From Octopus bimaculoides (taxonomy: Eukaryota): a stretch of DNA of 49,487 bases. Shown here in pieces: positions 1,800 through 47,292 of the stretch. The stretch is from positions 17,640,290 to 17,689,776 of the forward strand of contig NC_068998.1 of assembly GCF_001194135.2 (NCBI RefSeq). The letters run 5' to 3'. The notes below the pieces were generated by a model. The model was given only the letters and a program-made list of their open reading frames with translations, searched no databases and was not told the DNA's origin. The first letter of the stretch is position 1. Every line of letters starts with the position of its first letter. The position numbers were made by a program, and so were the translations under genes.

Positions 1800-2150
1800 A
1801 TTTTGTTTAAATTGGTGTGCTAAACTCAAATTATCGTTTCTGGAAAGCTTTAAAATTTCATAATGAAACTAATGACATGTGCTGCTCAGGCCGTAAAGTA
1901 AGATTGTCAGCACTACCAGCTCCTCCTCAACCTCTTATGGATCTTCTGGAAGGCACTTCCATCCAGTCAAAAGATTTTCTGAGCAATATCAGACAATACA
2001 ACTCTGCATTTCAAATAACATCCTTTGGTGCATCTAAGGATGTAGCTGAACATGGATTTACGCCGACGTTCAAAGTTCAAGGGCAAGTCTATCACTTCAT
2101 TGGTTCCATGTTACCCACAAAGGAACAATCATAGTTCCTCAAATTTAATT
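1800..2150 (+). mobile_element. Helitron RepHel N-terminal fragment
   Basis: MCCSGRKVRL..LP.PP..L..LL.G.....FL.NIRQYNSAFQITSFGA...GFTPTFKVQGQVYHFIGSMLP is the conserved segment upstream of the Helitron Rep domain. It ends in a premature stop. Confidence 0.85.
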
Positions 2151-3170: not shown

Positions 3171-3911
3171 ACAATCACTCACATAAAGCACGTACATTTC
3201 ATCTTTTTTCTTTCACTCTTTCCATCTCTAACATACTCACAAGCACACACACACAAACGCACACAGACTACCGCATGCACACACATAAGCACACACGCGC
3301 GCGCGCACACACACATACAACAATCTGTTCTCAATCTCACCCACGCATATTAAAGTTAAGCAGCTTGCAGTAAAGGTGAAGGTTAGTCTTTAATCTATTC
3401 GTACAGTTTTGCCTAAGTCAGAGTGCTTTGTGATGTTATTGTTTAACCAGAGGTCATCCCACATCGAACAGGACTGTAATCAATTATAGGCATGGCAATG
3501 TGAATTCACGTCTCTCCAGCAGTATATAGGGTTAATCTATATTAGACTTCTCCTACCTTTTTTTTTTTTTCATTTTATTAAGATAGTCGCTATGATTCGA
3601 TGGTCATTTAGCTGCTTTTTCTAGAGTGTCGAAATACTAAGTATAACAGCGGTTCTGAACCACAGCTCCCAGGGCCGCATGTGGCTTTCAAGCATCCTTC
3701 CGACAGCCCCCAATGGTCTTCCCTTCATAGACATACTTTATTTTTTTAATTGATATATCTCACGTTTTATGGTGCGCCCCTAAAAAATCCTGCATNNNNN
3801 NNNNNNNNNNNNNNNNNNNNNNNNNNNNNNNNNNNNNNNNNNNNNNNNNNNNNNNNNNNNNNNNNNNNNNNNNNNNNNNNNNNNNNNNNNNNNNNNNNNN
3901 NNNNNNNNNNN

Positions 3912-4792: not shown

Positions 4793-5641
4793 TGACTATT
4801 AATTCTGCCATGAAGGGAAACCATCGGGCTGGCGGATTTCCGAGATCTGGGCTATCCCCCAGATCACCACAGATCCCCCTCCATGTTTAACAGTTGGAAG
4901 GAGGCAGTCTAGGTCAAATGCTTCTTTTGGCTGCCATACGAGCACCAGCTATTTGACCTGTTTGAAAGACCAATAGATCTGTCATTTTAATGAATTTTAG
5001 TTACCTTTTTCTGATGATATCTGAAAAGAAACATCAATTTTAGCAGAACATATTATGCAACACTAATAATAAATCAAAAGACATAAAAATAAACAAGCTT
5101 TTCACGGTTTTATAGATATTTCAAAATTATGATGCTATGATGTTAGGTNNNNNNNNNNNNNNNNNNNNNNNNNNNNNNNNNNNNNNNNNNNNNNNNNNNN
5201 NNNNNNNNNNNNNNNNNNNNNNNNNNNNNNNNNNNNNNNNNNNNNNNNNNNNNNNNNNNNNNNNNNNNNNNNNNNNNNNNNNNNNNNNNNNNNNNNNNNN
5301 NNNNNNNNNNNNNNNNNNNNNNNNNNNNNNNNNNNNNNNNNNNNNNNNNNNNNNNNNNNNNNNNNNNNNNNNNNNNNNNNNNNNNNNNNNNNNNNNNNNN
5401 NNNNNNNNNNNNNNNNNNNNNNNNNNNNNNNNNNNNNNNNNNNNNNNNNNNNNNNNNNNNNNNNNNNNNNNNNNNNNNNNNNNNNNNNNNNNNNNNNNNN
5501 NNNNNNNNNNNNNNNNNNNNNNNNNNNNNNNNNNNNNNNNNNNNNNNNNNNNNNNNNNNNNNNNNNNNNNNNNNNNNNNNNNNNNNNNNNNNNNNNTGTG
5601 TGTGTGTGTGTGTGTGTAAATTGATCACTCTTAGTCTTGTC

Positions 5642-5650
5642 AGTCATGTG
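5642..5650 (+). promoter_or_regulatory. Distal M-box-like site AGTCATGTG
   Basis: Exact match to the first 9 nt of the M-box, about 1.5 kb upstream of the ATG. A single site could occur by chance. Confidence 0.3.
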
Positions 5651-5682: not shown

Positions 5683-5890
5683 TTCTATTCTAGGCACAAG
5701 GCCCGAAATTGTGGCGGAGGGGGGAGGCACTCGATTAGATCGACTCCAGTGCGCAAATAGTACTTAATTTATCGACCCCGAAAGGATGAAAGGCAAAGTC
5801 GACCTCGGCGGAATTTGAACTCAGGACGTAATGACAGGCGAAATACCACCTAAGCATTTAGCCCGGCGTGCTTAACGTTTCTGCCAGCTC
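5683..5890 (-). mobile_element. tRNA-derived SINE, family A
   Basis: Reverse complement of the GGCGAGCTGGCAGAA...GAGTTCAAATTCCGCCGAGGTCGACTTTGCCTTTCATCCTTTCGGGGTCGATAAA unit, which recurs more than 15 times. A-box and B-box-like motifs in the head. Confidence 0.9.
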
Positions 5891-6739
5891 AAAGGTCTCA
5901 TAAGACCGAAATGTATCCATACAATCGTAGGCTATAAAGAGCAAACCCATTGTAGTCTATATTGCTAAAAACTTCCAATAAACATAATATTGGAGTTATC
6001 TCACTAGTTTGTTGATTTCAAAATTTTGGATAGGAAGTTTTTGTTTACTAATTGCATAGATAATCTCAGTCCATCGACATTTCACCCTACATGTGTCTGT
6101 ATTTCCGGGGTTTAAATTTGCACCGTAATACGCTTGCGCAACATACAAACACAGGTACAAACGTACATAAATATTCCCAGATAGACGTAACCACAATGTT
6201 GATTCAAAAAGTGAAAAAAAAAAGTATGTGAATGAACTTTCTATACGACCATAATCCCATTTAGTTGCATAATCACAATTAAACATACATATTCATATTA
6301 TATACATACATACCTGCATTAAAAAAAACGTACAAACACGCATATACAGAGACAGAGAGAGAGTGAGAGAAAGAGAAAGAGGATGGGGAGAGGGAGAAAG
6401 AGGATGGGGAGAGGGAGAAAGAGAGACAAAGAGGGGAAAGAGAACAAAAATACAATTTCTTTAAACATTCAAATAGTAAATTACTTCAATTTGTGATATT
6501 ATATTTGTTTGGTGATGAGCTATTGTAAGAGTGTGACCATGTGCGCAATTGTGTGTGTGTGTGAGAGAGAGAGAGGGGGGGGGAGAGAGAGAGAGGAGAG
6601 AGAGAGGGGAGAGGGAGAGAGGGGGAGAGAGAGTGTGTGTCGGTGCGTGCATGCATGTGTGTGTGCGTCGATGTGTATGTGTGTTTTAGATGAATACGTT
6701 TTCAGATAAAGTGGAGGTGGAGTCTGATTCGTCTCCTAT

Positions 6740-6895
6740 GTCACGTAGCTGTTTAAAGCTTCGGAATTCGTCATGTGCTTACGTACATCAGTCACGAGGA
6801 CATGCTGAAAAAAAGAAGCGAGGGTTAAATATTAAAAAGAAAAAAAATAAGCAAATAGGTGAAAAACAATGTATTACAGAGGTGGGTCACGTGAG
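6740..6895 (+). promoter_or_regulatory. Cluster of MITF/TFE-type E-boxes including a near-perfect M-box
   Basis: CGTCATGTGCT at 6769-6779 (10/11 match to the M-box AGTCATGTGCT). GTCACGTGAG at 6886-6895 (palindromic TCACGTGA). One-mismatch sites GTCACGTA at 6740 and GTCACGAG at 6791. All lie 250-410 bp upstream of the ATG. Function is inferred from the motifs only. Confidence 0.55.
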
Positions 6896-6940
6896 TAATT
6901 ATTAGCCGGTAATCCAGTCGCCATTAACCCAGCGTCGACT

Positions 6941-6970
6941 TAATATATGGTGCATGTGGTCCGGTCAGTC
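6941..6970 (+). promoter_or_regulatory. Possible core promoter (TATA-like element plus initiator)
   Basis: TAATATAT at 6941 and TCAGTC (TCAKTY-type Inr) at 6965-6970, about 26 bp apart. They lie between the E-box cluster and the ATG. Short motifs in AT-rich DNA, so weak evidence. Confidence 0.3.
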
Positions 6971-7145
6971 ACAGTAAAACAGTTGTACGTTACGGAACTC
7001 TGAAGGATCTTAATGGCTTGCTAACAGTAACAAACGCAGGAGAGCGAAAATACATAGAAACTTGTTAAAACAAAGTTTTTTGCCTTTTCTTTTTTTTTAC
7101 ATTTTCACCTTAATCAAAAAAATATATTTGAATATATTTACGAAT

Positions 7146-7293
7146 ATGCATCGCTATTTGGCTATGGATATTCCTCAAACATTTTCATGTTTTCTTTTCT
7201 TCACATTATTGCCCTCAATTTCTGCACAGTTTCCAAGAGTATGTGCGGAAAATGCCACCACTCCTGATGGAATTTGTTGTCCAACAAGACCAG
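7146..7293 (+). CDS. Exon 1 of membrane-bound tyrosinase/TRP family gene (signal peptide and start of Cys-rich domain)
   Basis: Translates MHRYLAMDIPQTFSCFLFFTLLPSISA-QFPRVCAENATTPDGICCPTRP. A hydrophobic signal peptide is followed by the QFPRxC...CCP N-terminus typical of TYRP1/DCT. Donor CAG|GTAAAA at 7294, phase 1. The alternative start ATG at 7164 is equally plausible. Confidence 0.9.
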
Positions 7294-7944
7294 GTAAAAC
7301 CCCCTCTTTCTTTTCCGTTTTCTATTTCTGGTATAAACTTTCTTTCAAGCATCTTTACTTTTATGTTTCTTGTGAAATGTTTCCCCTATTCTGGCACAAA
7401 AAAGAACCCAACTTATCTATCATTTAACAAAAACAGTCATCGACTTAGCATCTTGCTAAGCTATTTCTTTCTTTTTATATGAGTAGCAATGTGCGTCACA
7501 GTATTTACTTCCGTCTCTTCTTCCCCTTCTAGTTCAAATTTCATTATTATCTTCTGTTATTACATTCTTCTTGGGTCAATAAGGTAAGTACGAATATGGT
7601 AGCGGGACCGATGGACTGTAAGAAATTCAGTATTTGCGTATAATTCACCTTCTACAAATGATGGCCTTGTGTCTCGTCAAAATAAATCAATAGGACTTAT
7701 AGATATGGTTGCATTTATAGCAATACTGATAGTCTTAAACAGTTCGTTAATAACGGATAAGCAAAACATTTGAAATATGTGTCAATTTTTCCGTGAACTA
7801 TGTTAGTTTAAGTGAATTTAAATAAGATTTTTAATTTCGATTATAACTTCGATAGTTATCCCTCGTCCAAACTTCAAAGTTTTCTAAATTTGGCAAGACG
7901 ATATTGATGAAGGCGATAATAATGATAATAATAATAATAATAAT

Positions 7945-8157
7945 CCTTTCTACTATAGGCATAAGGCCTGAAATTTGAGGAAAGGGATTAAGTCGGTTAC
8001 ATCGACCTCAGTGCGTAACTGGTACTTTATCTAATCGACTCTGAAAGGATGAACGGCAAAGTTGAACTCGGCAGAATTTGAACACAGAACGTAGCGACAG
8101 ACGAAATACCGCTAAGCATTTCGCCCTGCGTGCTAACGATTCTGCCAGCTCGCCACC
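7945..8157 (-). mobile_element. SINE family A
   Basis: Full-length reverse copy, with an (ATT)n tail at about 7920-7944. Confidence 0.9.
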
Positions 8158-8262
8158 TTATGATGATGATGATGATGATGATAATAATAATAATAGTTGT
8201 TGTTGCTACAGCTGCTGTTGTTGTTGTTGTTGTTGTTGTCAAAGAGACAAACTACTGTTGGA

Positions 8263-8443
8263 AAAAATGCTTAGTGGCATTTTTTTTCAGGTTCATTACA
8301 TTTGAGATTCAAATCTCACCGAAATAAACTTTACCTTATGTCCTTTCGGGATGGATAAAATAAAGTACCAGTCAAGTACTGGGGTCGATGTAATCGACTT
8401 CCCAGCACCACGCTTTCCTCAAAATTGCTGGCCTTGAGCCAAA

Positions 8444-8445
<2 letters not shown>
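8263..8445 (+). mobile_element. SINE family A, 5'-truncated
   Basis: AAAATGCTTAGTGGCATT...GAGATTCAAATCTC...GGGGTCGATGTAATCGACT...GGCCTTGAGCCAAAA, followed by an (AAT)n tract. Confidence 0.85.
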
Positions 8446-8478
<33 letters not shown>

Positions 8479-8511
8479 TAATGATATTATTATTATTATT
8501 ATTATTAGTTC

Positions 8512-8543
<32 letters not shown>

Positions 8544-9181
8544 TAAATCTTCAGTATTAATACTTTTGTTATTAAAGATACGTTGTTGTTGACGACGCCA
8601 TGTACATCCATCTTGCTTGTTTTGAGGGTAAAAAAAGGCGGGTGTGCAACATTTTATCATTCATGTTAATTGAACTTTTCCATTTATTGAACTCAACTCT
8701 CCACGATTTCCTCATATGAAGAAATCGAAAAATATATCAATAACAATTTTTATTTTTTTATTTTTTTAATACTAACTGTGTCTTTCCTTTTTTTTTTTTT
8801 TTTTTTTTTTTGTCCTTTTAATTTAGACTAATTAGAACCATGATGTCGTTAGCTTTCGCGCAGCTGAAATCATATTCCTTTTATCAGTAGGACTGCGGAC
8901 GGCAAAACTAGTAACGACTCGGACTTAAATGTTGTGAAGCATTTAGTTATGTCTCTTTAAGTTCTGGCTTCAAATCTCCGAAACCTGTCTGGGTCTTTCT
9001 TCTCTTCGGGATTGACATAACTAAAAGCAGTTTTGTACTGGTGTCAGTGTAATTGTGTGTACTCTTCCGCCAAATTGTGTGGTTTGTGTCCAAGTTTGAA
9101 ATTATAATTTCTGTATTTAACCTAATTCACATTATCTGCAATGCCATTATCGTATCTTAGTGCCTTCCTATATATATACAC

Positions 9182-9213
<32 letters not shown>

Positions 9214-9832
9214 NNNNNNNNNNNNNNNNNNNNNNNNNNNNNNNNNNNNNNNNNNNNNNNNNNNNNNNNNNNNNNNNNNNNNNNNNNNNNNNNNNNNNNN
9301 NNNNNNNNNNNNNNNNNNNNNNNNNNNNNNNNNNNNNNNNNNNNNNNNNNNNNNNNNNNNNNNNNNNNNNNNNNNNNNNNNNNNNNNNNNNNNNNNNNNN
9401 NNNNNNNNNNNNNNNNNNNNNNNNNNNNNNNNNNNNNNNNNNNNNNNNNNNNNNNNNNNNNNNNNNNNNNNNNNNNNNNNNNNNNNNNNNNNNNNNNNNN
9501 NNNNNNNNNNNNNNNNNNNNNNNNNNNNNNNNNNNNNNNNNNNNNNNNNNNNNNNNNNNNNNNNNNNNNNNNNNNNNNNNNNNNNNNNNNNNNNNNNNNN
9601 NNNNNNNNNNNNNNNNNNNNNNNNNNNNNNNNNNNNNNNNNNNNNNNNNNNNNNNNNNNNNNNNNNNNNNNNNNNNNNNNNNNNNNNNNNNNNNNNNNNN
9701 NNNNNNNNNNNNNNNNNNNNNNNNNNNNNNNNNNNNNNNNNNNNNNNNNNNNNNNNNNNNNNNNNNNNNNNNNNNNNNNNNNNNNNNNNNNNNNNNNNNN
9801 NNNNNNNNNNNNTGTGTGTGTGTGTGTGTGTA

Positions 9833-10583
9833 TAAGCTTTTGAACAAACTCGAGCATCTCCTCCAACCAAACATGCTTTGGTTTTTCTGAGACGAGAAAA
9901 ATTTCTATCAAGATCAGATGCTGAACACACAGAACAATCGTTGGCTTGCCGTGTCCCCAAAACATATACCGAAAGTGATAAAAATAAAACACCCAGTCAA
10001 CCTCAGGGTGTTCGGAGTGATCACTAGTGATGGCGGCGTTATGCCTCCATTCATCTTCCCACACAGCCTCAGACTCAACACGGAGGCCTACATCAAGTGC
10101 CTGGAGGAGATAGTGCTACCCTGAGTCAAGAGGGTGGCTGCTGGATGACCCTATGTCTGGCAACAAGACTCTGCATCATGCTATACAAGCAGGGAAACCC
10201 AGTCATGCTGTCAGACAATTTCTGCGACCACATCACTTCTAATATCTGGCCACCTAACTCCCCCACACTGCAATCCACTTGATTATTATGTGTAGTTGAG
10301 CGAGAGACCAACGAAACTCCTTGTAACACCAAAGATGAACTGAAGGCAAGGATTATGGCAGCATTCACCAACTTAAACAAGGAGACTGTCCGGAAGTGTT
10401 GCACGAGATTCCTAAGTCGTCTTGAGGCTGTGGTTGAAGCCAATGGCGATTTTATTGAATAGGTCTACTCTCTAGTATTTGAAGATATTTTATGTAATTC
10501 GGGTAAATATATCTGTTAAAATGAGATGTTAGTGCTAACTTCATTCTTGTGTAATTTAGACGACAATTTATTCACTACTTACG
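9833..10583 (+). mobile_element. maT (DD37D) Tc1/mariner transposon, 3' half, decayed
   Basis: KHP..LRVFGVITSDG.VMPPFIF, WQQDSA and WPPNSP..(PL)DYY. Restoring the frameshifts gives 37 residues between the last two Asp. The ORF ends LEAVVEANGDFIE*. A TIR-like end GACAATTTATTCAC is followed by TA. Confidence 0.85.
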
Positions 10584-10601
10584 TATATATATATGTATTC
10601 A

Positions 10602-10855
10602 ATGAGGGAGTGATGAAAAGTTCCTGGCTTAAAGAGTATCACGGAAGGCCTGACTGGAGACCCAACCTTCCGGGTTCTTTTACAGGGCTTAGAAAAACTG
10701 AAGGACCGCTGCAATAAGTGTATCAATCTGAGAGGGGTTTATTCTTTTATTCTTTTACTTGTTTCAGTCATTTGATTGCGGCCATACTGGAGCACCACGT
10801 TGAATAAATTCATAATTAACTGATCATCTTGTGTTTTCTTTTACCTAAAAGGAAC
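10602..10855. mobile_element. Mariner-derived MITE (same family as 40026-40192) with a nested SINE tail fragment
   Basis: GAGGGAGTGATGAAAAGTTCCTGGCTT at the left end. Internal sequence is shared with 40026-40192. Interrupted at about 10741-10798 by the reverse 3' end of SINE family B. Confidence 0.65.
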
Positions 10856-11399
10856 TCATTGAAAATCGCTGGTATAAACTCTAAGCTGTGCAGCTTACTG
10901 TTGTATAAAACGTTTGCATAACTTCATTGAATATCTTACCGTTGTATAACTTATGGTATAACTTATTGTCGTTTAGCTCCAGTTCGACTGTAATCAAACA
11001 GACTTATGATCAAAGACAATCTAACCATGACCGTCCTGTTCTTATAAAGTGTATACAACTACAATATTTAATGTGTCCTTCCATTTTTTTATCAATGGTA
11101 GGGTGTGTGATCTTTTTCAGAGAGATTTCACAGCCATTTTAGTAGGTCGAGTGACTGCATAACCTCCTGGTGCTTGGTTTATCGTTGTGTTCCTCTAAAT
11201 AGGTTTCGAGGGATCTCAGGATTCCGTGAAAAAAAGATCCTGGTCTCCCACAAGATAAAGTGGTATTTAATGAAATTTAACAAAAAATTATTTTATAAAA
11301 CGAATGTTACTCATTTACAAAATCAAGGTTATATTCATTTATTTTTACGAATAAATTGTATCGTTAAAACAATTTTTATTATATTTAATGTTCTTATTT

Positions 11400-11617
11400 T
11401 TTTATTGCCCACAAGGGGCTAAACATATAGGAGACAGACAAGGACAGACAAACGGATTACATCGACCCCAGTGCGTAACTGGTACTTAATTTATCGACCT
11501 CGAAAGGATGAAAGGCAAAGTCGACCTCGGCGGAATTTGAACTCAAAACGTAGTTGGAGACGAAATACCACTAAGCATTTCGCCCGGCGCGCTAATGTTT
11601 CTGCCAGCTCGCCGCCT
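11400..11617 (-). mobile_element. SINE family A with alternative tail (..TTTAGCCCCTTGTGGGCAATAAA)
   Basis: Full-length reverse copy. The tail matches the copies at 15143 and 45310. Confidence 0.9.
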
Positions 11618-13566
11618 CAATTATAATCAATCTTCTAATATTATATTTATATTTATTGTATAATTATATTTAATGTTCTAACATTATATTTAATGTTCTA
11701 TTAATATGAAGGTGGTGGGGATGTCTGTAAAATATAGGTGTTGGTTTCTGAATTTTTGTGAAATCATATGAAAATTCCACGCTAAAATATGCTTCAGAAC
11801 CGCTGGTAACAGTCCGGTAGATTATAGCAACAGTCCAGTAGATTATAGAGTTCAAATATTTCCCATGAGTCTTATTTAACGAAGAATGAGATAAACTAAC
11901 CTAGGTGATGTAATTTATGCGAAGATGGTTATATTTTCTTTTGAAGAAATTATAGGAAAATACTTTTCTAAACACCTTCATTCCCAACAGTTCTCTGGAT
12001 GAAACTACTTCTTCAAAGTAGTCTGTGTTTGGCAAAAATAAAGAGAGGCTGGAACTCTCTTGATCAACCCGTCTGTTTAATCAGGGCTGAATTGGAGGTA
12101 AAACAACAACAATAACAAGGGGACCTCTAAATTAATGGTCCCTAACCTTTTCTATGCCTCACAAATATTTCATTTATTTTTGTATCCCCTACAAAAGTGA
12201 TATCCCATATAAAGATTTAAAAGCCATTTTTTTTAGTAACTAAATTATTTCTTTTTTTTTATAAATTGAACTACATATAGTATTGTGGACGGACACATTG
12301 AACTTCAAAAATAAATTCGCAAAATGCGAATATAAATTGAGCAATTAGAAACAGTGAATTATACACAGTGAAATCAATCACAATTGTGAAAATAAAATTC
12401 GAAGACTTCCGACTTCTCATTCGTAACTTTATCAAAACGTAGCACTTTCTTTCTGATTGCAATGTGTACGTTTGCTCGTGAATTCAGGCAATTTGTCTCG
12501 ATGGACAAAAGAACTGAATCCAAACTCGCATAAGTGTGTTGTTGCAAATGGAATGAAGACACTGTTCTTAGTTATAACCTGTTAAGGGTTAAAGCTACAC
12601 GAGTAGAATAACAACGTCCTTGGTGCGCTTGGTTGAAAAAGTCATTTGCAAGAGCTTTGTTCTGAAAGTTGATTTAAATAAAATATATACTTCTTTTGTC
12701 GAACCTCAAAATGCTTCCTCGCACTACCAGGAAATGCAGATACTCTACGTTGGGAAACTAGCTCTAAGTAGTTGCTCGACCTCTTTGAAATTGCTGCCAA
12801 ATCACCCACAAATCATACTGTATCGTCTTAAATAATGCATACAGTGAACAATGTAATCCCTGATATTATAGAAGATGAGATGGTCACAAATGGAACACCT
12901 TTGACCATATGACTGTTTTATCACGGTTGACAACAGTAACAACTACCTAAACTGCAGTTAAACTCTTACACCCTTGAAACTACCAAAGCCTATGTAGCAG
13001 CGAAGACTTACTGTGGACCCTGAAGCATATTCAATGACTTCTAATCTGATTACCAGTTGTATAAATAAGGAAGACTAAATACTGGGACCAGATTAGGTTG
13101 ACAAACAAGCCATTTGTTCCATTTGTTTTTCATTCTGTTTTAAAAGGATATTTTTGATCGCAGTCAACAGCTGCTGAGTTTATATTTGTCTGCTTGATCG
13201 GAAATCTTGTTAGCTCCTTAAGAGAGAGAAAAATATAACGATTCAAATACCCTTTTAAAACATAGCTTGGGTCACCCTAAAGATATATTATAAATCCTTT
13301 TAATTACGATTATAAATCCATCTGGTTTTGTTCACAAAACAAAAGAAAAGAGAGAAAAACAGAAAGAAGTTGCTTTATGTACTGTTATACATTCATTGAC
13401 TTATGTTTGAAAACTTTTGCGAATATATTTCACATATCCACACCACCGTCACCATTTTCTGTGCCTCTCCTTTTTCATCATCCTACAACCACCATAACCA
13501 CCACCACCACCACCACCACCACTGCTACTACTACTACTACTAATAATAATAATAATAAGGATAATG

Positions 13567-13600
<34 letters not shown>

Positions 13601-13677
13601 TGATAATAATAATTACAGCTGTTGCAGTAGCAGCGGCGTTGTTTTTACTACTAATTCGTTATTAATAGAAATACGAC

Positions 13678-13732
<55 letters not shown>

Positions 13733-13819
13733 CGCGTGTGTGCGTGTGTGTGTGCGCGCGCGCGCGAATGTAAATTACTATGTCAGGTCTATTATGTTTA
13801 AATTTTATTAAGGTTTTCA

Positions 13820-14810
13820 TTGGAACTCCTTTTTATTATGAGTGGCTATGGCTTCTACCATACTGTGGGTTCTTATTTCTTTGTGCTAGGGGTTATCCTT
13901 CCGACGGATCTCATTACAGAGTATCTTAGCTACAACATCACATCTCATCGGTAGATAATACCGTGATGACATTTTCGGACAGCTGCTTCTGGTGTGGGTG
14001 ATATCTTCGGTGTTAACAAAGTCTGCATCGGTTGTCACATTTTGCTGCTTTTCCTGCATCTCTGTCTATTTTGTGCATCAGGTGTTCGGTTGATATTTCC
14101 TGCTCCTGGATTGCAAACGCATACGCTTCAAAGTGGGAGGTAGTAATCCGATTGTTGATCCATGATAAACTGCTTTGATGATCAGTATTACTATCATCCT
14201 AGAGCTTTCTACCAACATATCCATCTTCTGCTGATATGCGCTCATCCTTCCATCTGATGATATATTGCGGTAGAGTCGTGCGACTTCTTTGGGTATGTAT
14301 TTAAGGTTATCAGACAAGGAATACTGCTCAAGGAGCTGCTTCCCAAGTCTCATGATATTATCAGCCTCATATGTATATAATTGGTCAAGGGATACACTTC
14401 GGCACTTGATGTTTAAAAGATGTTGCTGAAGAGATATGATATGACATTCAGAAGCAGTCTGGGTTGATTTTAAACCTCTTCCTCCTTGTTTTCGTTTCAG
14501 GGGGAAGCAGTCTACGTCACTGCTGATGTGGAAATTATGTGTGCTGGTTAATACCGTTGGGTTTTCACATCTATGACTCGGATCTTATCAAGCGTTCAAT
14601 CATGTAGCCCAAATGTTGGTGTGTGTACTGGTACTGCAAACACATTATGGGCCACTGTTTTATTGAACGCCGAAAGTTCCGAGGTTCATATTTTCCTTAT
14701 TCGGCTGTAATATTCTTCGGTGAAACGTGTTTTGTTACAGGTGCCATCGTAAGATATGTTTCTATCCACCCCCAAGATACCTGTAACATTCCTCGTCAGA
14801 TAAGGGTAAA
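13820..14810 (-). mobile_element. R4/Dong-like RLE retrotransposon fragment
   Basis: Reverse frames give ILGVDRNISYDG..NKTRFTEEYYSRIRKI and a CRLC...DI.H-type knuckle. Positions 13830-14030 are near-identical to 25800-26020. Confidence 0.75.
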
Positions 14811-15142
14811 CAGTTAAGTCATTAGTGAAGATGTTGTTAGTCTTAGTCTGTTTTTCAGTTTTCCCTCTTTTCACAACCGTATAACAAAAAGCAAAATTTA
14901 TCATGGATGGATGGGTGGATGGGTGGATGGGTGGATGGATGGATATAGGTGTATGTATGTATGTATGAACATGCACATAAGATATATGTATGTAAACGCA
15001 TATTCATATACTAATGCCGGTGAATATGCACATATAAACATATATTCAAATATAAGTATGCTTATAAATATACATAAATACATACACACACACACGCACG
15101 CACGCACAGACGCGCGCGCGCATATAGTATATGTACTAACAA

Positions 15143-15565
15143 GGCGGCGAGCTGGCAGAAACGTTAGCACGCCGGGTGAAATGCTTAGCGGTATTTCGTC
15201 GGTCGTTACGTTCTGAGTTCAATCAAATTCCGCCGAGGTCGACTTTGCCTTTCATCCTTTCGGGGTCGATAAATTAAGTACAGTTACACACTGGGATAGA
15301 TGTAATCCGTTTGTCTGTCCTTGTTTGTCCCCTCTACGTTTAGCCCCTTGTGGGCAATAAAGAAATGAGAAACGTTAGCAAACCGGGCGAAATGCTTAGC
15401 GGTATTTCGTCTGTCTTTATGTTCTGAGTTCAAATTCTGCCGAGGTCGACTTTGCTTTTCATCCTTTCCGTGTCGTTAAATTAAGCACCAGTTGCGTACT
15501 GAGGTCGATCTAATCGACTGGCCCCTCCCTAAAAATTTTGGGCCTTGTGCCGAGAGTAGAAAAGA
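15143..15565 (+). mobile_element. Tandem pair of SINE family A copies with different tails
   Basis: 15143-15365 ends GGGCAATAAAGAAAT. A second, head-truncated copy starts immediately and ends GGCCTTGTGCCGAGAGTAGAAAAG, followed by (CA)n. Confidence 0.9.
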
Positions 15566-15674
<109 letters not shown>

Positions 15675-16089
15675 ATCTATATATATACATATATGTAGGT
15701 AGGTATATATATGTGTGACGTGTGTGTGTGTGCGTGTGGGCGTGTGTACATGTACACATCGTGATGCAAGTATAAGTATTTTATGTACACGTAGCTAAAA
15801 ACCCTTTATGCATACACAAATATAAATACTCAACAAAATACCGTGAAGCACGTAGGTACAGAAAAAATATACTGAATATACATACACTAATATGGGATGG
15901 TTTTGACGAATGCATATACATCGTTCACATGAACACAAAAAGTGACACAAAGTAACCGGTTGATAGACAAACATTCAAGTATATGTAAGTAAATTTCACA
16001 ATTGATGTAAAAGACTAGAGACTTCTATCTTATATTTTAATATTAATACAAGAAAGTGAAGCTTGCTTTTCTCATTGAAAAATTATGCG

Positions 16090-17900
16090 AAACTTGAAGT
16101 ATTGCTCAACAAACTTGAACAAGCCTGAGCAAAAAGCACCCCAGGAGGTGATTGCGTTTCGTATAAGGTATATAACTACAGCGATCGTTTCCGAAAGAAG
16201 CTTTTCATCTTGCTCCGACAACTTTGGCATGAAGAGGTTCTAGTGGATGATTGGTGTACAGCAGAAGGTATATACCTGCCAAAGGAAGCCAATGCAGAGA
16301 CTATAAATCAATTCAGACCATATCCTTATTGAATGTGAATGGCAAGATTTATATGGGGATTCTTTCAAAAAGAACAATGACATACCTTCGGCGTAATGAC
16401 TATGCGGATTAATCTGTTCAAAAGATTGGAATCCTCGGGATTCCTGGGTGTGTTGAACATTCCTTTTCAATTTAGAAGGTAATCCAGGATGTCAAACAAA
16501 ACGAGATTGAAGTAGTTGTATGTTTACAAGGGGGAGACTGATGACGAACAAAGACTCAGAAACATGTCTCTGATGACGAACAAAGACTCAGAAACATGTC
16601 TCTGATGACGAACAAAGACTCAGAAACATGTCACAGGAAATGTGTCAAGGCCGACAGGAAGCGGTGCAGCTTCCTAGGTCTAACCAACAGTAGTATTATT
16701 CCCTTCAGGGGAATGTCGCANNNNNNNNNNCTTCCTAGGTCTAACCAACAGTAGTATTATTCCCTTCAGGGGAATGTCGCATTAAGTTGACAGCATACAA
16801 CTACTTCATCGTATCACTACTGCATAAATCTCTCTGAGAGATTTAGATATGTATTATTTCTAAAAAAAAAAAAAAAACAAGATTGATCTAACTAATGCAT
16901 ATGGCTCAGTACCACATGAATTGCTGATGAGAGCTACGGGCCACTTCCACATTCTAGAGAAGGTAACAAAATTAATGAAGAAATACCATGACAGTATCGA
17001 GATGAGATTTACATCTGGCAACTTCACAAGAGACTGGCACTGCTTGAAGATTGGTGTTGCTGGTAGCTGCACAATATCTTTCATGTGGTTTATTCTTGTC
17101 ATAGAGATACTTTTAAAAGCAATAGACTTTCAGAACAAATGGTTCAGATACAATCACCTAAGAAGGCATTCATGGATAGACCTGACTCTTCTATCTATAG
17201 ATGAGTAAACCATTCAGAATGCTCTCACAAGGCTAGACGGGCTGATAAAGTGGTCAAGGATGTGATTCAGAGCAAAAAAGTTATGTAGCTTGACATTTGT
17301 TAGACGTGTACAGAAAGAAGTGAAATTTAAAATAGCAAGTATATCAACAGTCAAAGAAGAACCTATTAAAAGCCTGGGTCATGCATACCCTAGAATATTT
17401 TCAGATAGAAGCTGAGGATGGACTAAAGACAGTTGATGGTTCAAGCTATCTAGTAATCACTACCTTAGGAAGTGCGGAATATTTGCGGTACCAGAATTGA
17501 GTTGCAAGTTCATACGAACTTATCAAATTCATTAGTATGTAAGCTATATAGCTATATTAAGCAACTGTTTGGTCTCAACAGACTAAATCTTTTTTTCCCG
17601 TGGGTATTTAGGGACTTCGTCACTGAACGGTTAGAGATTTGATAGCAGGCAAAATTTCGCTCGCAGGCAGAAAGGTTTCTACCTAAACAAAGAAAACTGT
17701 AGGTGGTGTTGCTCTCTTCCAGTTGTTATAACTCAAATTTTAATGTCATTGACTCTGAACAAAGAAAAAGAAAAAATTAAACCAATTACTTGAGAGCCAA
17801 GCCTCAGGCTTGGCACTTTAGCAACGACCTTGATCTTTCGAACAACCCAGACTTGTTAAAGTATACATTAATGGCTTCTTGCGAGCAGACACGTTAAAAT
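16090..17900 (+). mobile_element. HERO-like RLE non-LTR retrotransposon RT fragment, interrupted by an insert at about 16525-16876
   Basis: YLPKEANAETINQFRP.SLLNVNGKIYMGILSKR...SVQKIG..GIPGCVEH (frameshifted). After the insert it resumes DLTNAYGSVPHELL...MRFTSGNFTRDWHCLKIGV.GSCTISFMWFIL. The clade call rests on recalled motifs. Confidence 0.75.
16538..16632 (+). ncRNA. Three head-to-tail 32-nt units, each resembling a minimal type I hammerhead ribozyme
   Basis: Unit CTGATGA-CGAACAAAGACTCA-GAAACATGTC-T starts at 16538, 16570 and 16602. It has CUGAUGA and GAAA cores, a palindromic ACAUGU helix III and a GUC triplet. Helix II is weak. The tandem repeat itself is certain; the ribozyme identity is inferred. 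Confidence 0.5.
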
Positions 17901-20618: not shown

Positions 20619-20658
<40 letters not shown>

Positions 20659-20699
20659 CTTTCTCTTTAATTTTAGAGGAAATTTTGACCGGCCACCTG

Positions 20700-21075
20700 T
20701 TTGGTAGCAAGGTTGTGAAGGAAAGTATCTTCTTTTAACCATCATCTTTTAAATCATAAAGTCTTACAGGTTTTTACAGTCCTAGATATCGAGATCATTT
20801 GTAGCATATGAATTAAGGATTTGCATTCTCTTCCAAATATCTCAAGGTCAGCCATACTTTGCGCCAGACAGGTTGGTATGTATCCTGTTGTTCCAATATT
20901 GATAGGTTTGGAAGAGTATCTTGGATACTGGATTTGCAAAGTCCTTATCAAATGTCTATAGATGTCCCCTTTCTCTTGTATTTTTCTCACCACATTCGTA
21001 TTCAGAGGACAGCTGATTTCCACAACAGGACATATCCTTTCTTTCTGGTCCCACACAACGATATCTGACCGGTTG
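20700..21075 (-). mobile_element. R4/Dong-like RLE domain fragment (3' end of ORF)
   Basis: ICPVVEISCPLNTNVVRKIQEKGDIYRHLIRTLQ...PINIGTTGYIP matches the E...K..Y...P..IG..G pattern at the end of RLE ORFs. Confidence 0.75.
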
Positions 21076-21367
21076 TGTTTTAACTTGGTGGTCGTTCTCG
21101 TTTGTAGGTATTTTCTTTTTTGTTATCGTGTTCCAGATCGCTCTGCCTCTAAAGTATACTAAACGTTTTTTATAAGCAGTGCTTCTTACATTATTTTGTT
21201 AAGGTTGTTTCAACAGATATTCCATAGAAATTATAGCCAGCGCTGACTTTTGCTACAACGTTTCGTTTCGAGACGTCCATATTTCAGGAGTTGCTGCCCT
21301 TCCATTAGCACCCATCTAACCCATTCTCGCCTCTGAACACATTGCTTATATAGCCACCACATAGAGC

Positions 21368-21570
21368 GGTGTTAAATTATTGGATAAACCAATTTACATA
21401 TTAAACGCATTCTTGGAACTTGTATTTAGACATTAATGATTTATAGGTACGTGGTACTTCGTTATGCAAACATAATGCACTATAAAGTATGCTAAATGTT
21501 TTTATAAGTCAGTACCACGCTCCAGGAATGTGCTTAATATGTAAATTGGTATATCCAATAACTTAACACC
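21368..21570. repeat. Imperfect inverted repeat, 52-bp arms
   Basis: Positions 21368-21419 match the reverse complement of 21519-21570 with 6 mismatches. Confidence 0.85.
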
Positions 21571-21755
21571 ATCGCTTGACAACCGATATTAGTGTATTTA
21601 CGTCCCAGTAACTTAGCGGTTCGGCAAAAGAGACCGATAGAATAAGTACCAGGCTTACAAAAAATAAGCCCTAGGGTTGATTTCTCCGACTAAAAGGCGG
21701 TGCTCCAGCATGGCCGCAGTCAAATGACTGGATCAAATAAAAGAATAAAACAATA
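21565..21755 (+). mobile_element. 3' module of SINE family B
   Basis: CACCATCGCTTGACAACCG...ACTTAGCGGTTCGGCAAAAGAGACCGATAGAATAAGTACC...GGCGGTGCTCCAGCATGGCCGCAGTCAAATGACTG. Homologues at about 20390-20560, 43000-43170, 43190-43385 (-) and 45665-45800. Confidence 0.8.
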
Positions 21756-21756
21756 A

Positions 21757-21794
<38 letters not shown>

Positions 21795-21797
<3 letters not shown>

Positions 21798-22005
21798 CTT
21801 GTCTGGCTCCTTACCCTGCTCCCAGCCACGCTGTTGCACCTGCCCCTACCTCAGGCACCAATCACCGTCCCTATAACGTAACCGACTGCATCACCTGCTC
21901 TCTCTGTCCTTCCCTGTACATTGGTCAAATGGGACGCTTAGCTGACCAGTTCGCGAAGCACCTCCGAGACATCAGACTTGGCTACGACAATAAACCGGTT
22001 ACATC
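21795..22005 (+). mobile_element. Penelope-like element GIY-YIG endonuclease fragment
   Basis: Hand translation gives CSQPRCCTCPYL...CITCS(L)CPSLYIGQMGR.LADQFAKHLRDIRLGYDNKPV, matching the C..RC..C / C..C..LYIG.T.R.L..RF.EH pattern. Confidence 0.75.
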
Positions 22006-23301: not shown

Positions 23302-23355
<54 letters not shown>

Positions 23356-23424
23356 ACACACAATTTTTTACCTTGTCTATGTAATATACCTGTCGTCCCT
23401 CAACCTACCAGCAAACAAATGAAT

Positions 23425-23760: not shown

Positions 23761-23909
23761 TTATTGTCATCCATTCATTGATAAATTAAATTATTTGCTA
23801 TCTTTACTTCTAATGAATAAAATTATATCACCATTGAATTGTAATTTTGCAATAGACTTCAGTATTAAAGTAGTATGAAACCTATCTCTTTTCAAACTTC
23901 TAATTTCAG

Positions 23910-24871
23910 GTGATACACTTCCATGTGGCGGTCCATTACGGGGATTGTGCCGGCCAATAGATTTTACCAACGAGGTTGATCTGGTCCCACCTGAAAACAA
24001 GATGGACGATCGTTTTAACTGGCCCACACGTTTCTTTAAACAAGCATGTGACTGTCGTGGTAACTATGATGGTTTTATGTGTCAGCACTGTGATTATGGA
24101 TTTACAGGACTTAATTGCACCAAAAAACTTCGTCGCATTCGCAAAGATTACAGGAAATTAACTAAAGAAGAGAAAGACGAGCTTCTTCGTGGTATTTTAC
24201 TGCTGAGTGAGACAGACAGTGATTATGCAGTTTTGGATACTACTGCTTCAGTGGATCCTGCAGTGAACCCAACATTTGTAAATGTATCGGTGTACAATTA
24301 TTTAGCTTATTTCCATTACTATGTGGCTAGGAGGACACTTGTGAAGCCTATAGAAAAGTGTCAAACGGCAGCCTTCGTGCCCGATTTTGCTCACGGAGGA
24401 CCGGTGTTCAGTTCGTGGCACCGAGCATATCTCTTACTTTGGGAAATGGAAATAGCAAGAGCCCTGAAAAATCCATCGTTTTCTTTCCCCTATTGGAACT
24501 GGACTGAATCAGGTAGAAATTGTGATGTGTGTACCAACGATTTTATGGGTCATACACCTGATAACAAAAACGGAACACTTGATACTTTGTCTTTGTTTTC
24601 GGAGTTCTCCGTATATTGCGTACCGACTCTGGGCGGCTGTGCAGGCTGCAACGTGTCAACACCGAGTGGGAAGATTATTCGACGCCCAGGCAACAACCCT
24701 GAATATCGCTCACTTCCTCCTTTGAGGGATGTAGAGTTCTTGAAGGCCGTTAAAAACTATGACACTTTACCGTACGACACACGCAGTGGTAATAACAGCT
24801 TCAGAAACCTTTTGGAAGGGTTTGCGAATAGAGAAGGACCAACCACCGGTAGAATGTACACTCATAATCAG
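23910..24871 (+). CDS. Exon 2 of tyrosinase/TRP family gene (EGF-like Cys-rich region, metal site A, first His of site B)
   Basis: Acceptor TTTCAG|G at 23909; phase 1 matches exon 1 (G-GT-GAT...). Encodes CDCRGNYDGFMCQHCDYGFTGLNC, FHYYVAR, DFAHGGPVFSSWHR, PYWNW..CDVC, SFRNLLEGFA and THNQ. Donor CAG|GTTGGT, phase 0. Confidence 0.95.
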
Positions 24872-37288: not shown

Positions 37289-37423
37289 GTCCATGCTTTC
37301 ATGAATGGAACATTTTCTGAATTGGTTACAGCTGCATTCGACCCTGTTTTCCAGCTTCATCATGCATTCGTAGATAAAACTCTGGAAATTTGGATCAGAG
37401 AAAACCAACCAGCTTACTCAGAG
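37289..37423 (+). CDS. Exon 3 of tyrosinase/TRP family gene (metal site B)
   Basis: Acceptor TTTTCTCAG|GTC. Encodes VHAFMNGTFSELVTAAFDPVFQLHHAFVDKTLEIWIRENQPAYSE, continuing HNQ|VH in frame. Donor GAG|GTAAGT, phase 0. Confidence 0.95.
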
Positions 37424-40718: not shown

Positions 40719-40863
40719 CTGCCAGTATTTGAAGCCCCGCCGGGTCACGGTAGAATGGCCAACATGGTGCCGTTCTTTCCAGTAGAAAAGAACTTCATGA
40801 TGTTTGCTCACTCACACGCTCTTGGCTACGACTATGACGATTTGGTTGTAGAAGATGTACCGA
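40719..40863 (+). CDS. Exon 4 of tyrosinase/TRP family gene
   Basis: Too short for the ORF track; translated by hand. Acceptor TTTTTGACAG|CTG. Encodes LPVFEAPPGHGRMANMVPFFPVEKNFMMFAHSHALGYDYDDLVVEDVP, matching the family motif AP.GH.R..NMVPF.P...LGY.Y. Donor A|GTAAGT, phase 1. Confidence 0.92.
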
Positions 40864-47056: not shown

Positions 47057-47292
47057 AAACTTCGCTCAGTCCAGTTTGGATTATTGTTATTGTCGAAGCT
47101 GGTCTTTTACTGCTTCTGCTGGCAATCATCATCGAATTGGCACGCACACGTAATCACCGTTCCCAAGCAAGACAACTGAGTTCCACGTCCGTGCATAACA
47201 ACGTCACCGCTGACACAGCTGATGAAGAACAACCAATATTCCAACCAGGAAACCCAACTTACAGAACCTATAATGCTGCCGAGAATTCATAG
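47057..47292 (+). CDS. Exon 5 (terminal) of tyrosinase/TRP family gene: TM helix and cytoplasmic tail
   Basis: Long poly-T tract then TTGCAG|AA; phase 1 fits exon 4. Encodes KTSLSPVWIIVIVEAGLLLLLLAIIIELARTRNHRSQARQLSSTSVHNNVTADTADEEQPIFQPGNPTYRTYNAAENS, ending at TAG 47290-47292. The 541-aa total matches vertebrate family members. Confidence 0.88.

What the first reader, a model, noticed from the sequence alone, without database searches (positions are those of the whole stretch)
6740..6970. MITF-type M-box/E-box cluster upstream of the pigmentation gene
Seen: four GTCA(C/T)G-core sites within about 160 bp, in non-repeat sequence. They include CGTCATGTGCT (10/11 to the M-box) and GTCACGTGAG (9/10 to the CLEAR element GTCACGTGAC), followed by a TATA-like and Inr-like pair. 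A further AGTCATGTG lies at 5642. Known: vertebrate TYR, TYRP1 and DCT promoters are driven by MITF through the M-box and T-flanked E-boxes. Inference: the MITF-to-tyrosinase link may be conserved, or convergently rebuilt, in a cephalopod.
Basis: partly seen in the sequence, partly recalled or inferred. Interest (0 to 1): 0.7.

Follow-up and report, generated by a model that had tools for sequence, protein, structure and literature searches.

The report
Conserved E-box promoter of octopus tyrosinase
Just upstream of the octopus tyrosinase (melanin enzyme) gene lie two short DNA motifs of the type read by the pigment-cell regulator MITF; they are unchanged in octopuses, an argonaut and a cuttlefish, so this is very probably a working promoter, though which protein binds it is untested.

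Summary
The window is Octopus bimaculoides. The gene is a five-exon, membrane-anchored TYR-type tyrosinase with its ATG at 7146.

Only two are true T-flanked E-boxes:
- the M-box-like CGTCATGTGCT (6769-6779);
- the palindromic TCACGTGA (6887-6894).

GTCACGAGG (6791) is not an E-box; it is N-box-like. GTCACGTAGC (6740) is found only in the genus Octopus. AGTCATGTG (5642) is already lost in O. sinensis.

The clustering alone is only marginally unusual. Conservation is the real evidence. The region 6705-7145 is the main conserved non-coding block of the locus between Octopus and Argonauta. GTCATGTGC, TCACGAGG and TCACGTGAG recur in the same order in the 5' leader of Sepia tyrosinase mRNA contigs (6 of 20,000 shuffles do as well).

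Most Sepia RNA 5' ends lie at the CACGTG box. The layout M-box, A/T-rich stretch, E-box at the start site therefore parallels the mouse Tyr promoter.

Verdict: a real, conserved proximal promoter module. Control by a bHLH-zipper factor is likely. MiT/TFE is the best single candidate, and USF is the main rival. This is a new member of a known kind.

The parts
6705..7145 (+). Conserved non-coding block: the proximal promoter plus 5' leader of the tyrosinase gene
   Evidence: It aligns colinearly with Argonauta L001 9224-9734 and on to the ATG (64-68% identity, E 5e-21). Apart from one intron-1 element, it is the only unique colinear non-coding match in the locus. Identity to O. sinensis is 96-100% over 6850-6999, against roughly 85-90% in the flanks.
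6713..6722 (+). GGAGGTGGAG, an octopod-conserved run at the 5' edge of the block
   Evidence: Identical in Argonauta. Not found in the Sepia leader. Function unknown.
6740..6749 (+). It is not an E-box and not deeply conserved.
   Evidence: Its core is CACGTA. It is present in O. sinensis but replaced by unrelated sequence in Argonauta.
6769..6779 (+). M-box-like element CGTCATGTGCT (T-flanked E-box TCATGTG at 6771-6777)
   Evidence: 10/11 to AGTCATGTGCT. CGTCATGTGC is identical in O. sinensis and Argonauta, and Sepia has TGTCATGTGCT. GTCATGTGC is one of only two 9-mers shared by all three lineages.
6788..6799 (+). TCAGTCACGAGG, a conserved non-E-box element that is N-box-like (CACGAG at 6793-6798)
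   Evidence: 12/12 identical in Argonauta. TCACGAGG is kept in Sepia at a fixed 21-22 bp from the M-box-like site. The assignment to the N-box class (CACNAG) rests on background knowledge and was not tested.
6806..6865 (+). A/T-rich spacer with TATA-like stretches (TTAAATATTAAAAAG, AAGCAAATAGG) between the two boxes
   Evidence: Read directly from the sequence. Sepia has AATAAAAAAAAAG and GATAAATAG in the same interval, 20-50 nt upstream of the main pile of RNA 5' ends. Its role as a TATA element is inferred.
6884..6895 (+). GGGTCACGTGAG: the palindromic T/A-flanked E-box TCACGTGA (6887-6894), CLEAR-like 9/10
   Evidence: It is the only TCACGTGA in the window. It is 12/12 identical in Argonauta and O. 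sinensis, and TCACGTGAG is kept in Sepia. Sepia RNA 5' ends cluster on it.
6910..6915 (+). TAATCC, an Otx/K50-homeodomain-type site
   Evidence: GGTAATCC in both Octopus species and GGTAATCT in Argonauta. Not seen in Sepia. The factor assignment rests on background knowledge.
6940..6970 (+).
   Evidence: At 14 nt it is the longest octopod-identical run. The Inr-like hexamer varies within the consensus: TCAGTC, TCATTC, TCATTT. The similar Sepia element CATTAATAGAGGTGCC (L004:133-148; the equivalence is judged by eye) lies inside the RNA contigs, so this pair is probably transcribed leader.
7013..7024 (+). A three-codon upstream reading frame, ATGGCTTGCTAA, in the leader
   Evidence: Identical in O. 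sinensis. Argonauta has ATGGCCTTTTAA at the aligned position. Significance untested.
7146..7293 (+). Tyrosinase exon 1 (ATG, signal peptide, QFPRVC...CCPTRPG)
   Evidence: The five exons translate exactly to XP_014779110.1 (P0001).
23910..24871 (+). Tyrosinase exon 2 (Cys-rich region, CuA site, start of CuB)
37289..37423 (+). Tyrosinase exon 3
40719..40863 (+). Tyrosinase exon 4
47057..47292 (+). Tyrosinase exon 5 (transmembrane helix, cytoplasmic tail, stop codon)
   Evidence: The hydrophobic stretch VWIIVIVEAGLLLLLLAIIIEL is visible in P0001.

Best explanation
Window 6705-6970 is the proximal promoter, running into the 5' leader, of the Octopus bimaculoides TYR-type membrane tyrosinase gene.

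It carries three short elements that have been kept across coleoid cephalopods:
- an M-box-like T-flanked E-box (TCATGTGC, 6771);
- a fixed-distance partner, GTCACGAGG (6791);
- a palindromic T/A-flanked E-box (TCACGTGA, 6887).

The two E-boxes bracket an A/T-rich, TATA-like stretch. By analogy with Sepia RNA 5' ends, transcription starts at or just upstream of the CACGTG box.

Most likely mechanism: a bHLH-leucine-zipper dimer, most likely the single invertebrate MiT/TFE (MITF) orthologue, binds both boxes and switches the gene on in melanin-producing cells. This is the same logic as at the vertebrate Tyr promoter.

Shown here: the gene's identity, the presence of the motifs, their conservation and order, and the Sepia RNA 5' ends.

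Inferred: the octopus start site, the identity of the binding factor, and activation.

My sub-probabilities: functional conserved promoter module about 0.85; E-boxes bound by some bHLH-zipper factor about 0.7; that factor is MiT/TFE about 0.45-0.5.
For: Gene identity:
- The query is 100% identical to 'tyrosinase [Octopus bimaculoides]' with Pfam PF00264. The nearest non-cephalopod relatives are hemichordate and amphioxus tyrosinase-like proteins.
- The exact five-exon model was verified.

Conservation:
- The Octopus-Argonauta alignment of the upstream 450-700 bp contains perfectly kept runs CGTCATGTGC, TCAGTCACGAGG and TGGGTCACGTGA.
- O. sinensis keeps them all. The region 6850-6999 is as conserved as exon 1.
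- Spliced Sepia mRNA contigs carry GTCATGTGCTT, TCACGAGG and TCACGTGAG in the same order.
- The only 9-mers shared by all three lineages are the two E-boxes.
- Three or more colinear hits to octopod-conserved runs arise in 6 of 20,000 shuffles of the Sepia leader.

Flanks:
- The 5'T and/or 3'A flanks that MITF prefers (Aksan and Goding 1998, as reviewed in PMC6672050) are kept in every species.

Start site:
- Fifteen Sepia contig 5' ends fall at L004 positions 1-182. Ten of them lie within 105-145, around the box at 124-131. A second decapodiform contig starts about 5 nt after the box.
- This arrangement matches the mouse Tyr promoter: an M-box 70 bp upstream of the TATA box and an E-box downstream near the initiator, both bound by microphthalmia (PMC2120943).

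Precedent in molluscs:
- Mitf activates a Tyr promoter in the pearl oyster Pteria penguin (PMC8173187).

Excluded:
- No Rfam family matches the region and there is no RNA-structure signal.
Against: - No binding, chromatin or expression data exist for octopus. The presence of an MiT/TFE gene in octopus was not checked here.
- TCACGTGA and TCATGTG are also good USF and TFE3-type sites. CACGTG is read by many bHLH factors, so sequence alone cannot name the protein.
- The octopus start site is unmapped.
- In Sepia, four contigs run through both upstream motifs. Part of the block is therefore transcribed at least at a low level.
- Only one decapodiform species supplies the M-box region, and that sequence is RNA, not genomic.
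- The cluster statistic within the window is weak.
- It is not known which cephalopod tissues express this particular tyrosinase paralogue. Cephalopod chromatophore pigments are ommochromes, not melanin (background knowledge).
Confidence: 0.5

Rival explanations
1. The conserved E-boxes are generic core-promoter elements bound by a ubiquitous bHLH-zipper factor such as USF (or MAX/MLX-type dimers). They set basal promoter strength, and pigment-cell specificity comes from other elements such as GTCACGAGG, the homeodomain sites or the intron-1 element.
For: GGTCACGTGA(G) is very close to the classical USF site, and USF also reads T-flanked CATGTG sites (background knowledge). The CACGTG box sits right at the RNA 5' ends in Sepia, a typical position for USF-type start-site-proximal boxes. 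Other conserved non-E-box elements exist in the block and in intron 1.
Against: The CATGTG variant with the extended GTCATGTGCT flank is kept over 10-11 bp in three lineages. Per the MITF review, that variant is mostly associated with differentiation (pigmentation) genes. The paired M-box and start-site E-box arrangement matches a known MITF-driven promoter.
Confidence: 0.2
2. The boxes are targets of repressor or clock-type bHLH factors: HES/Hey proteins on the class-B CACGTG and the N-box-like CACGAG, or CLOCK:BMAL on CACGTGA. The module would then gate tyrosinase by Notch or circadian/light input rather than by MITF.
For: CACGAG fits the N-box pattern CACNAG and is 12/12 conserved with its flanks. 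CACGTGA is also the preferred clock E-box (background knowledge).
Against: This does not explain the conserved CATGTG M-box-like element. Neither clock nor HES regulation of any tyrosinase gene came up in the papers read here, though no search was aimed at it.
Confidence: 0.1
3. The block is conserved because it is part of the mRNA 5' leader and acts at the RNA level (upstream reading frames, translation or stability control). The E-box matches would then be incidental.
For: Sepia mRNA contigs include the CACGTG box, and a few include the M-box-like site too. A three-codon upstream reading frame is kept among octopods.
Against: Across lineages only short islands survive, and their spacing varies (84, 116 and 186 bp between the two boxes). 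That pattern is typical of factor binding sites. There is no excess RNA structure (z = +0.81) and no Rfam match. Most Sepia 5' ends lie downstream of the M-box-like and GTCACGAGG elements, yet those are the conserved ones.
Confidence: 0.08
4. Chance: short motifs picked out after the fact in AT-rich DNA, with apparent conservation due to slow neutral decay.
For: The within-window cluster statistic is weak, and GTCAYG is not enriched overall. A hemichordate TYR-like gene has GGTCATGTGAC at -580, but at a density compatible with chance.
Against: The three elements are kept colinearly in lineages separated by very long times, while the surrounding sequence is unalignable. The shuffle test gives 6 of 20,000. 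In the close pair Octopus-O. sinensis the block is more conserved than its flanks.
Confidence: 0.03

Closest known systems
Vertebrate tyrosinase proximal promoter (M-box, TATA box, initiator E-box) driven by MITF
   Same: The gene is of the same family: a membrane-bound TYR-type tyrosinase. There is an upstream CATGTG box with the extended flank GTCATGTGCT, then an A/T-rich TATA-like stretch, then a second T-flanked E-box at or near the RNA start. Mouse Tyr has the same order (PMC2120943).
   Different: The start-site box is CACGTG, not CATGTG. A third conserved element, GTCACGAGG, sits 21-22 bp from the M-box-like site. Spacing between the boxes varies from 84 to 186 bp among cephalopods. The octopus start site and the binding protein are unknown. 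Homology versus convergence is undecided.
CLEAR element (GTCACGTGAC) of TFEB/TFE3 lysosomal target genes
   Same: The core TCACGTGA is identical, with a 9/10 match in octopods. It lies close to the start site. Invertebrates have a single MiT/TFE gene, so MITF-type and TFEB-type sites would be read by the same protein (background knowledge; the review describes CACGTG as part of the CLEAR box).
   Different: There is a single copy rather than the multiple copies typical of lysosomal promoters. The gene is a pigment enzyme. The outer flanks differ in Sepia (ATCACGTGAG).
Mollusc Mitf-Tyr regulation reported in bivalves and gastropods
   Same: The same phylum and the same proposed regulator. In Pteria penguin, Mitf raised Tyr-promoter reporter activity about threefold, dependent on a region holding two CATGTG boxes (PMC8173187). 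An abalone study describes yeast one-hybrid assays with tyr promoters (PMC13544226).
   Different: The Pteria boxes lie about 1.6-1.8 kb upstream and were shown without cross-species conservation. Whether those bivalve and gastropod tyr genes are the same kind as this membrane-bound gene was not checked here. In the present case the boxes are promoter-proximal and conserved across coleoids, but nothing has been tested functionally.
USF-bound start-site-proximal E-boxes
   Same: GGTCACGTGA-type sequence at the start site.
   Different: This would not by itself explain pigment-cell specificity or the conserved M-box-like flank.

Membership tests
M-box (MITF site with CATGTG core) | Core CATGTG with a 5' T and/or 3' A flank | tested here: met
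   TCATGTG at 6771-6777. The same is found in O. sinensis, Argonauta and Sepia. The criterion is taken from PMC6672050.
M-box (MITF site with CATGTG core) | Extended 11-bp match to AGTCATGTGCT | tested here: met
   10/11 in O. bimaculoides, O. sinensis and Sepia (C/TGTCATGTGCT), and 9/11 in Argonauta. The 11-mer consensus itself is recalled from background knowledge.
M-box (MITF site with CATGTG core) | Lies in the proximal promoter upstream of the TATA box and start site | tested here: inconclusive
   Eleven of 15 Sepia RNA 5' ends lie downstream of it, and four contigs include or approach it. There is no start-site evidence for octopus.
M-box (MITF site with CATGTG core) | Bound and activated by MITF | not testable with these tools
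   Needs EMSA, DAP-seq, ChIP or reporter assays.
CLEAR / palindromic MiT-TFE E-box | TCACGTGA core within GTCACGTGAC | tested here: met
   The TCACGTGA core is exact in all four species. The 10-mer match is 9/10 in octopods and 8/10 in Sepia.
CLEAR / palindromic MiT-TFE E-box | An MiT/TFE orthologue is present and co-expressed in the organism | not tested
   Mitf is documented in a bivalve, an abalone and a chiton. The octopus gene was not retrieved here.
   TTAATATATGGTGC is identical in three octopods. The Inr-like TCAGTC, TCATTC or TCATTT lies 24-29 nt downstream.
   No octopus RNA was available. In Sepia and a second decapodiform, the apparently corresponding element lies inside the RNA contigs, downstream of most 5' ends. 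This argues against the assignment, but only by proxy.
TYR-type (membrane-bound, melanosomal-type) tyrosinase | Tyrosinase copper-binding domain | tested here: met
   Pfam PF00264 is recorded for P0001. CuA and CuB histidine motifs are visible.
TYR-type (membrane-bound, melanosomal-type) tyrosinase | Signal peptide, N-terminal Cys-rich region and a C-terminal transmembrane helix | tested here: met
   Read directly from the P0001 sequence. No dedicated predictor was run.
TYR-type (membrane-bound, melanosomal-type) tyrosinase | Orthology to deuterostome TYR rather than to secreted mollusc tyrosinases | tested here: inconclusive
   The best non-cephalopod hits are Ptychodera and Branchiostoma tyrosinase-like proteins at 34-36% identity. 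No phylogeny was built.
N-box (HES/Hairy site, CACNAG) | CACNAG core | tested here: met
   CACGAG at 6793-6798, conserved in Argonauta and Sepia. The family definition comes from background knowledge. Binding is not testable here.

The most novel reading that the evidence does not exclude
The arrangement 'M-box, TATA-like stretch, start-site E-box' upstream of TYR is homologous between cephalopods and vertebrates. On this reading it is a promoter architecture, together with the MiT/TFE-to-tyrosinase link, retained in TYR orthologues since the bilaterian ancestor and not rebuilt by convergence.
Probability: 0.1. Interest if true: 0.8.

Novelty: new member of a known kind. Interest (0 to 1): 0.5.

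Why it matters
Regulation of tyrosinase by MITF through T-flanked E-boxes is the textbook pigment-cell circuit of vertebrates. In molluscs it has been proposed from reporter and one-hybrid assays.

This locus is a cephalopod case in which the candidate sites are promoter-proximal. They have also been kept in octopods and a cuttlefish, lineages separated by roughly a quarter of a billion years (background knowledge).

That gives three precise, short targets (6771, 6791, 6887) for EMSA, reporter assays and CRISPR work in cephalopod models. It also gives a concrete test of whether the pigment-cell regulatory link is ancestral to bilaterians.

In addition, it provides a compact candidate pigment-cell promoter (about 450 bp) for cephalopod transgenesis.

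Tried and rejected
1. Decapodiform genomic promoter. The ENA contig L002 and the Sepia pharaonis locus L014 hold exon 2 but not exon 1 within the 9-10 kb available upstream. Only RNA contigs supply the decapodiform motif block.

2. A profile search with exon-1 peptides returned nothing.

3. An exhaustive representative search with the exon-1 peptide. It gave P0004 again, unrelated repeat proteins, and two exon-1-like reading frames of unknown taxon (L022, L023). Their upstream DNA has none of the motifs, so they were not used.

4. The distal AGTCATGTG at 5642 reads AGTCGTGTG in O. sinensis and abuts a dispersed repeat and an assembly gap. Discarded.

5. GTCACGTAGC at 6740 is not an E-box and is absent from Argonauta. 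Discarded as a deep element.

6. Known RNA families and RNA structure: none.

7. Outgroup check on the Ptychodera TYR-like gene. There is a GGTCATGTGAC at -580, but 13 TCAYGTG sites in 25.6 kb make this compatible with chance. It is not counted as evidence.

8. MAFFT mis-aligned the Sepia CACGTG box in the five-way alignment. Exact k-mer sharing was used instead.

9. Literature searches found no paper on MITF or a tyrosinase promoter in cephalopods.

10. I ran no further search on MITF. Vertebrate hits would have swamped any octopus entry.

Full report
**What the window is.** The conceptual product of two exons (7146-7293 and 23910-24871) is 100% identical to 'tyrosinase [Octopus bimaculoides]' (XP_014779110.1, 541 aa, Pfam PF00264). 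Its relatives are Argonauta hians (79%), three decapodiform proteins (68-69%) and, much further away, hemichordate and amphioxus tyrosinase-like proteins (34-36%).

The locus lies on chromosome CM046618.1 of GCA_001194135.2. Five exons translate exactly to that protein: 7146-7293, 23910-24871, 37289-37423, 40719-40863 and 47057-47292. The protein has a signal peptide, a QFPRVC...CCP Cys-rich N-terminus, CuA and CuB sites and a C-terminal transmembrane helix. That is the vertebrate TYR-like, membrane-bound build. So 'the pigmentation gene' is correctly identified, and the finding lies 180-400 bp upstream of its ATG.

**The observation.** All quoted strings are present:
- GTCAYG on the + strand at 6740, 6770, 6791 and 6886.
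- CGTCATGTGCT at 6769-6779.
- GTCACGTGAG at 6886-6895.
- TTAATATATGG at 6940.
- TCAGTC at 6965.
- AGTCATGTG at 5642.

The block starts right after (GA)n/(GT)n microsatellites that end near 6680. Only two of the four sites are E-boxes: TCATGTG at 6771-6777 and the palindrome TCACGTGA at 6887-6894. The other two have cores CACGTA and CACGAG.

As pure statistics the cluster is weak. GTCAYG is not enriched in the window (26 sites against 35 expected). Four sites in 160 bp turn up somewhere in 7 of 300 dinucleotide shuffles on both strands, and in 0 of 300 on one strand. The TCAYGTG cluster turns up in 10 of 300. TCACGTGA does occur only once in 49.5 kb.

**Conservation among octopods.** In O. sinensis (L013) all four sites are intact. 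The stretch 6850-6999 is 96-100% identical, like coding exon 1, against about 85-90% in the flanks.

In Argonauta hians (L001) the upstream region aligns colinearly (64-68% identity, E 5e-21). Apart from exons and dispersed repeats, the only other unique colinear match in the whole locus is a 120-bp element in intron 1.

The perfectly identical Octopus-Argonauta runs of 8 nt or more upstream of the ATG are listed here:
- GGAGGTGGAG
- CGTCATGTGC
- TCAGTCACGAGG
- ACAATGTAT
- TGGGTCACGTGA
- GCCATTAAC
- TTAATATATGGTGC
- ATTTTCACCTTAA
- two A/T-only runs

Both E-boxes and GTCACGAGG are therefore footprints. The site at 6740 is not, because Argonauta has unrelated sequence there. The distal site at 5642 is already AGTCGTGTG in O. 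sinensis and sits beside a repeat.

**Conservation in a cuttlefish.** Protein P0004 belongs to a 90% cluster that contains TYR of Sepia (Acanthosepion) pharaonis. Its Logan contigs align to the S. pharaonis genome in four separate exon blocks, so they are spliced mRNA.

The longest contig (L004) begins ...TTGTCATGTGCTTCTCACGTCAATCACGAGGCC...CCATCACGTGAGAAGC.... The same three elements appear in the same order. The distance from the M-box-like site to TCACGAGG is 21 nt, against 22 nt in both octopods.

I compared three upstream regions: Octopus 6690-7145, Argonauta 9290-10000 and Sepia 1-671. The only 9-mers they share are GTCATGTGC and TCACGTGAG. The only shared 8-mers that are not A/T-rich are those two boxes plus TCACGAGG. 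Sepia hits three of the eight non-low-complexity octopod-conserved runs, colinearly. Only 6 of 20,000 dinucleotide shuffles do as well.

The T/A flanks that MITF prefers (review PMC6672050) are kept everywhere. The spacing between the two E-boxes is free: 84 bp in Sepia, 116 bp in Octopus and 186 bp in Argonauta. Free spacing suggests separate binding sites rather than an RNA structure.

**Where transcription starts.** No octopus RNA was reachable. For Sepia I obtained 15 mRNA contigs from independent sequencing runs. All share the same 3' end and differ only at the 5' end.

In L004 coordinates they start at 1, 26, 54, 77, 105, 110, 111, 114, 116, 125, 128, 128, 137, 145 and 182. The CACGTG box is at 124-131. 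The eight P0004 contigs are the longest of 93, so they are biased upstream. The unselected P0013 set starts at 114-182. A second decapodiform contig (L012) starts about 5 nt after the position of the box.

Assembled contigs usually stop at or a little short of the true start. The main start is therefore most likely at or just upstream of the CACGTG box, 20-50 nt downstream of A/T-rich TATA-like stretches (AATAAAAAAAAAG, GATAAATAG). Minor upstream starts, or overlapping antisense RNA, would account for the four longer contigs.

This gives the order M-box-like, GTCACGAGG, TATA-like, E-box at the start site. [quoted passage not shown]

The similar decapodiform element CATTAA(T/G)AGAGGT(G/A)CC lies inside the RNA contigs. 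This is inference by homology, and octopods could still use a different start.

**Mechanism and rivals.** The best reading is a proximal promoter whose two T-flanked E-boxes are bound by a bHLH-zipper dimer. The single MiT/TFE orthologue is the most likely factor, for four reasons:
- The CATGTG variant with the extended GTCATGTGCT flank is kept.
- The gene is a TYR-type tyrosinase.
- The layout matches a proven MITF promoter.
- A Mitf-to-Tyr link has support in a bivalve and has been examined in an abalone (PMC8173187; PMC13544226).

USF reads the same sequences and is the main rival. HES/Hey or clock factors are possible, especially for the N-box-like CACGAG. An RNA-level role of the leader is disfavoured by the island-like conservation, the absence of a structure signal (z = +0.81) and the absence of any Rfam match. 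Chance is disfavoured.

**Comparison and novelty.** The module works like the vertebrate Tyr M-box and initiator E-box promoter, and like CLEAR-type MiT/TFE sites. Membership in the sense of 'bound by MITF' could not be tested. I found no paper on MITF or a tyrosinase promoter in cephalopods. Tyrosinase-positive pigmented cells are described in squid atlases. It is therefore a new member of a known kind. The more novel possibility is that the promoter architecture itself is ancestral to bilaterians. That stays open but unlikely on present evidence, because the hemichordate check was uninformative.

**Limits.**
- Only one decapodiform sequence covers the M-box-like region, and it is RNA.
- Exon 1 of decapodiform genomes lay beyond the reachable flanks.
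- The octopus start site, the MiT/TFE gene and the expression pattern were not examined.

Noticed in passing
window 13019-13141 (intron 1); Argonauta L001 15401-15523: This is the only other unique colinear conserved non-coding element in the locus (69% identity). Its perfectly kept core CTGACTTCTAATCTGATTA contains a palindromic Otx/K50-homeodomain-type site, TAATCTGATTA. It is followed by TATAAATAA and an inverted Sox-like pair, AACAA..CATTTGTT. It is a candidate intronic enhancer.
   Followed up: partly
window 6910-6915: An Otx-type TAATCC lies 16 bp downstream of the CACGTG box. It is kept in O. sinensis and reads TAATCT in Argonauta. OTX2 is studied alongside MITF at the human TYR gene in retinal pigment epithelium (PMC3258524, seen in the listing).
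   Followed up: no
window 7013-7024: A three-codon upstream reading frame, ATGGCTTGCTAA, sits in the presumed 5' leader. It is identical in O. sinensis, and Argonauta has ATGGCCTTTTAA at the aligned position.
   Followed up: no
L004 88-95 (Sepia mRNA leader): A near-perfect cAMP-response-element-like palindrome, CGACGTCA, lies between the A-run and the CACGTG box in Sepia. Octopus has TTACGTAC (6781-6788) and a CGTCA half-site overlapping the M-box-like element.
   Followed up: no
window 5149-5596 and eight other N runs (3796-3911, 9214-9812, 16721-16730, 20126-20385, 29964-30477, 43742-43790, 45299-45308, 48638-48647): These are assembly gaps, 2016 N in all. One lies only 1.1 kb upstream of the promoter block, so more distal regulatory sequence may be missing from this assembly.
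   Followed up: no
window 5690-5760: A dispersed repeat (GGCACAAGGCCCGAAATTGTGG...TCGATTAGATCGACTCCAGT) matches several places on both strands of the Argonauta locus. It is probably a SINE-like element shared by octopods.
   Followed up: partly
window 1811-2131 (+), 9836-10460 (+), 16864-17205 (+): Open reading frames that by eye look like transposon remnants: Helitron-like N-terminal motifs, a mariner/Tc1-like transposase and a reverse-transcriptase-like fragment. They lie upstream of the gene and inside intron 1. No family search was run.
   Followed up: no
L024 about 9419-9429 (Ptychodera flava TYR-like gene, 580 bp upstream of its ATG): GGTCATGTGAC, a fully T/A-flanked M-box-type site, lies just after a microsatellite tract. 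With 13 TCAYGTG sites in the 25.6-kb locus, this is compatible with chance.
   Followed up: partly
window 7294-23909: Intron 1 is 16.6 kb in O. bimaculoides, 7.7 kb in Argonauta, and more than 9-10 kb in two decapodiforms. The small exon 1 holds only the signal peptide and the first Cys-rich motif.
   Followed up: partly
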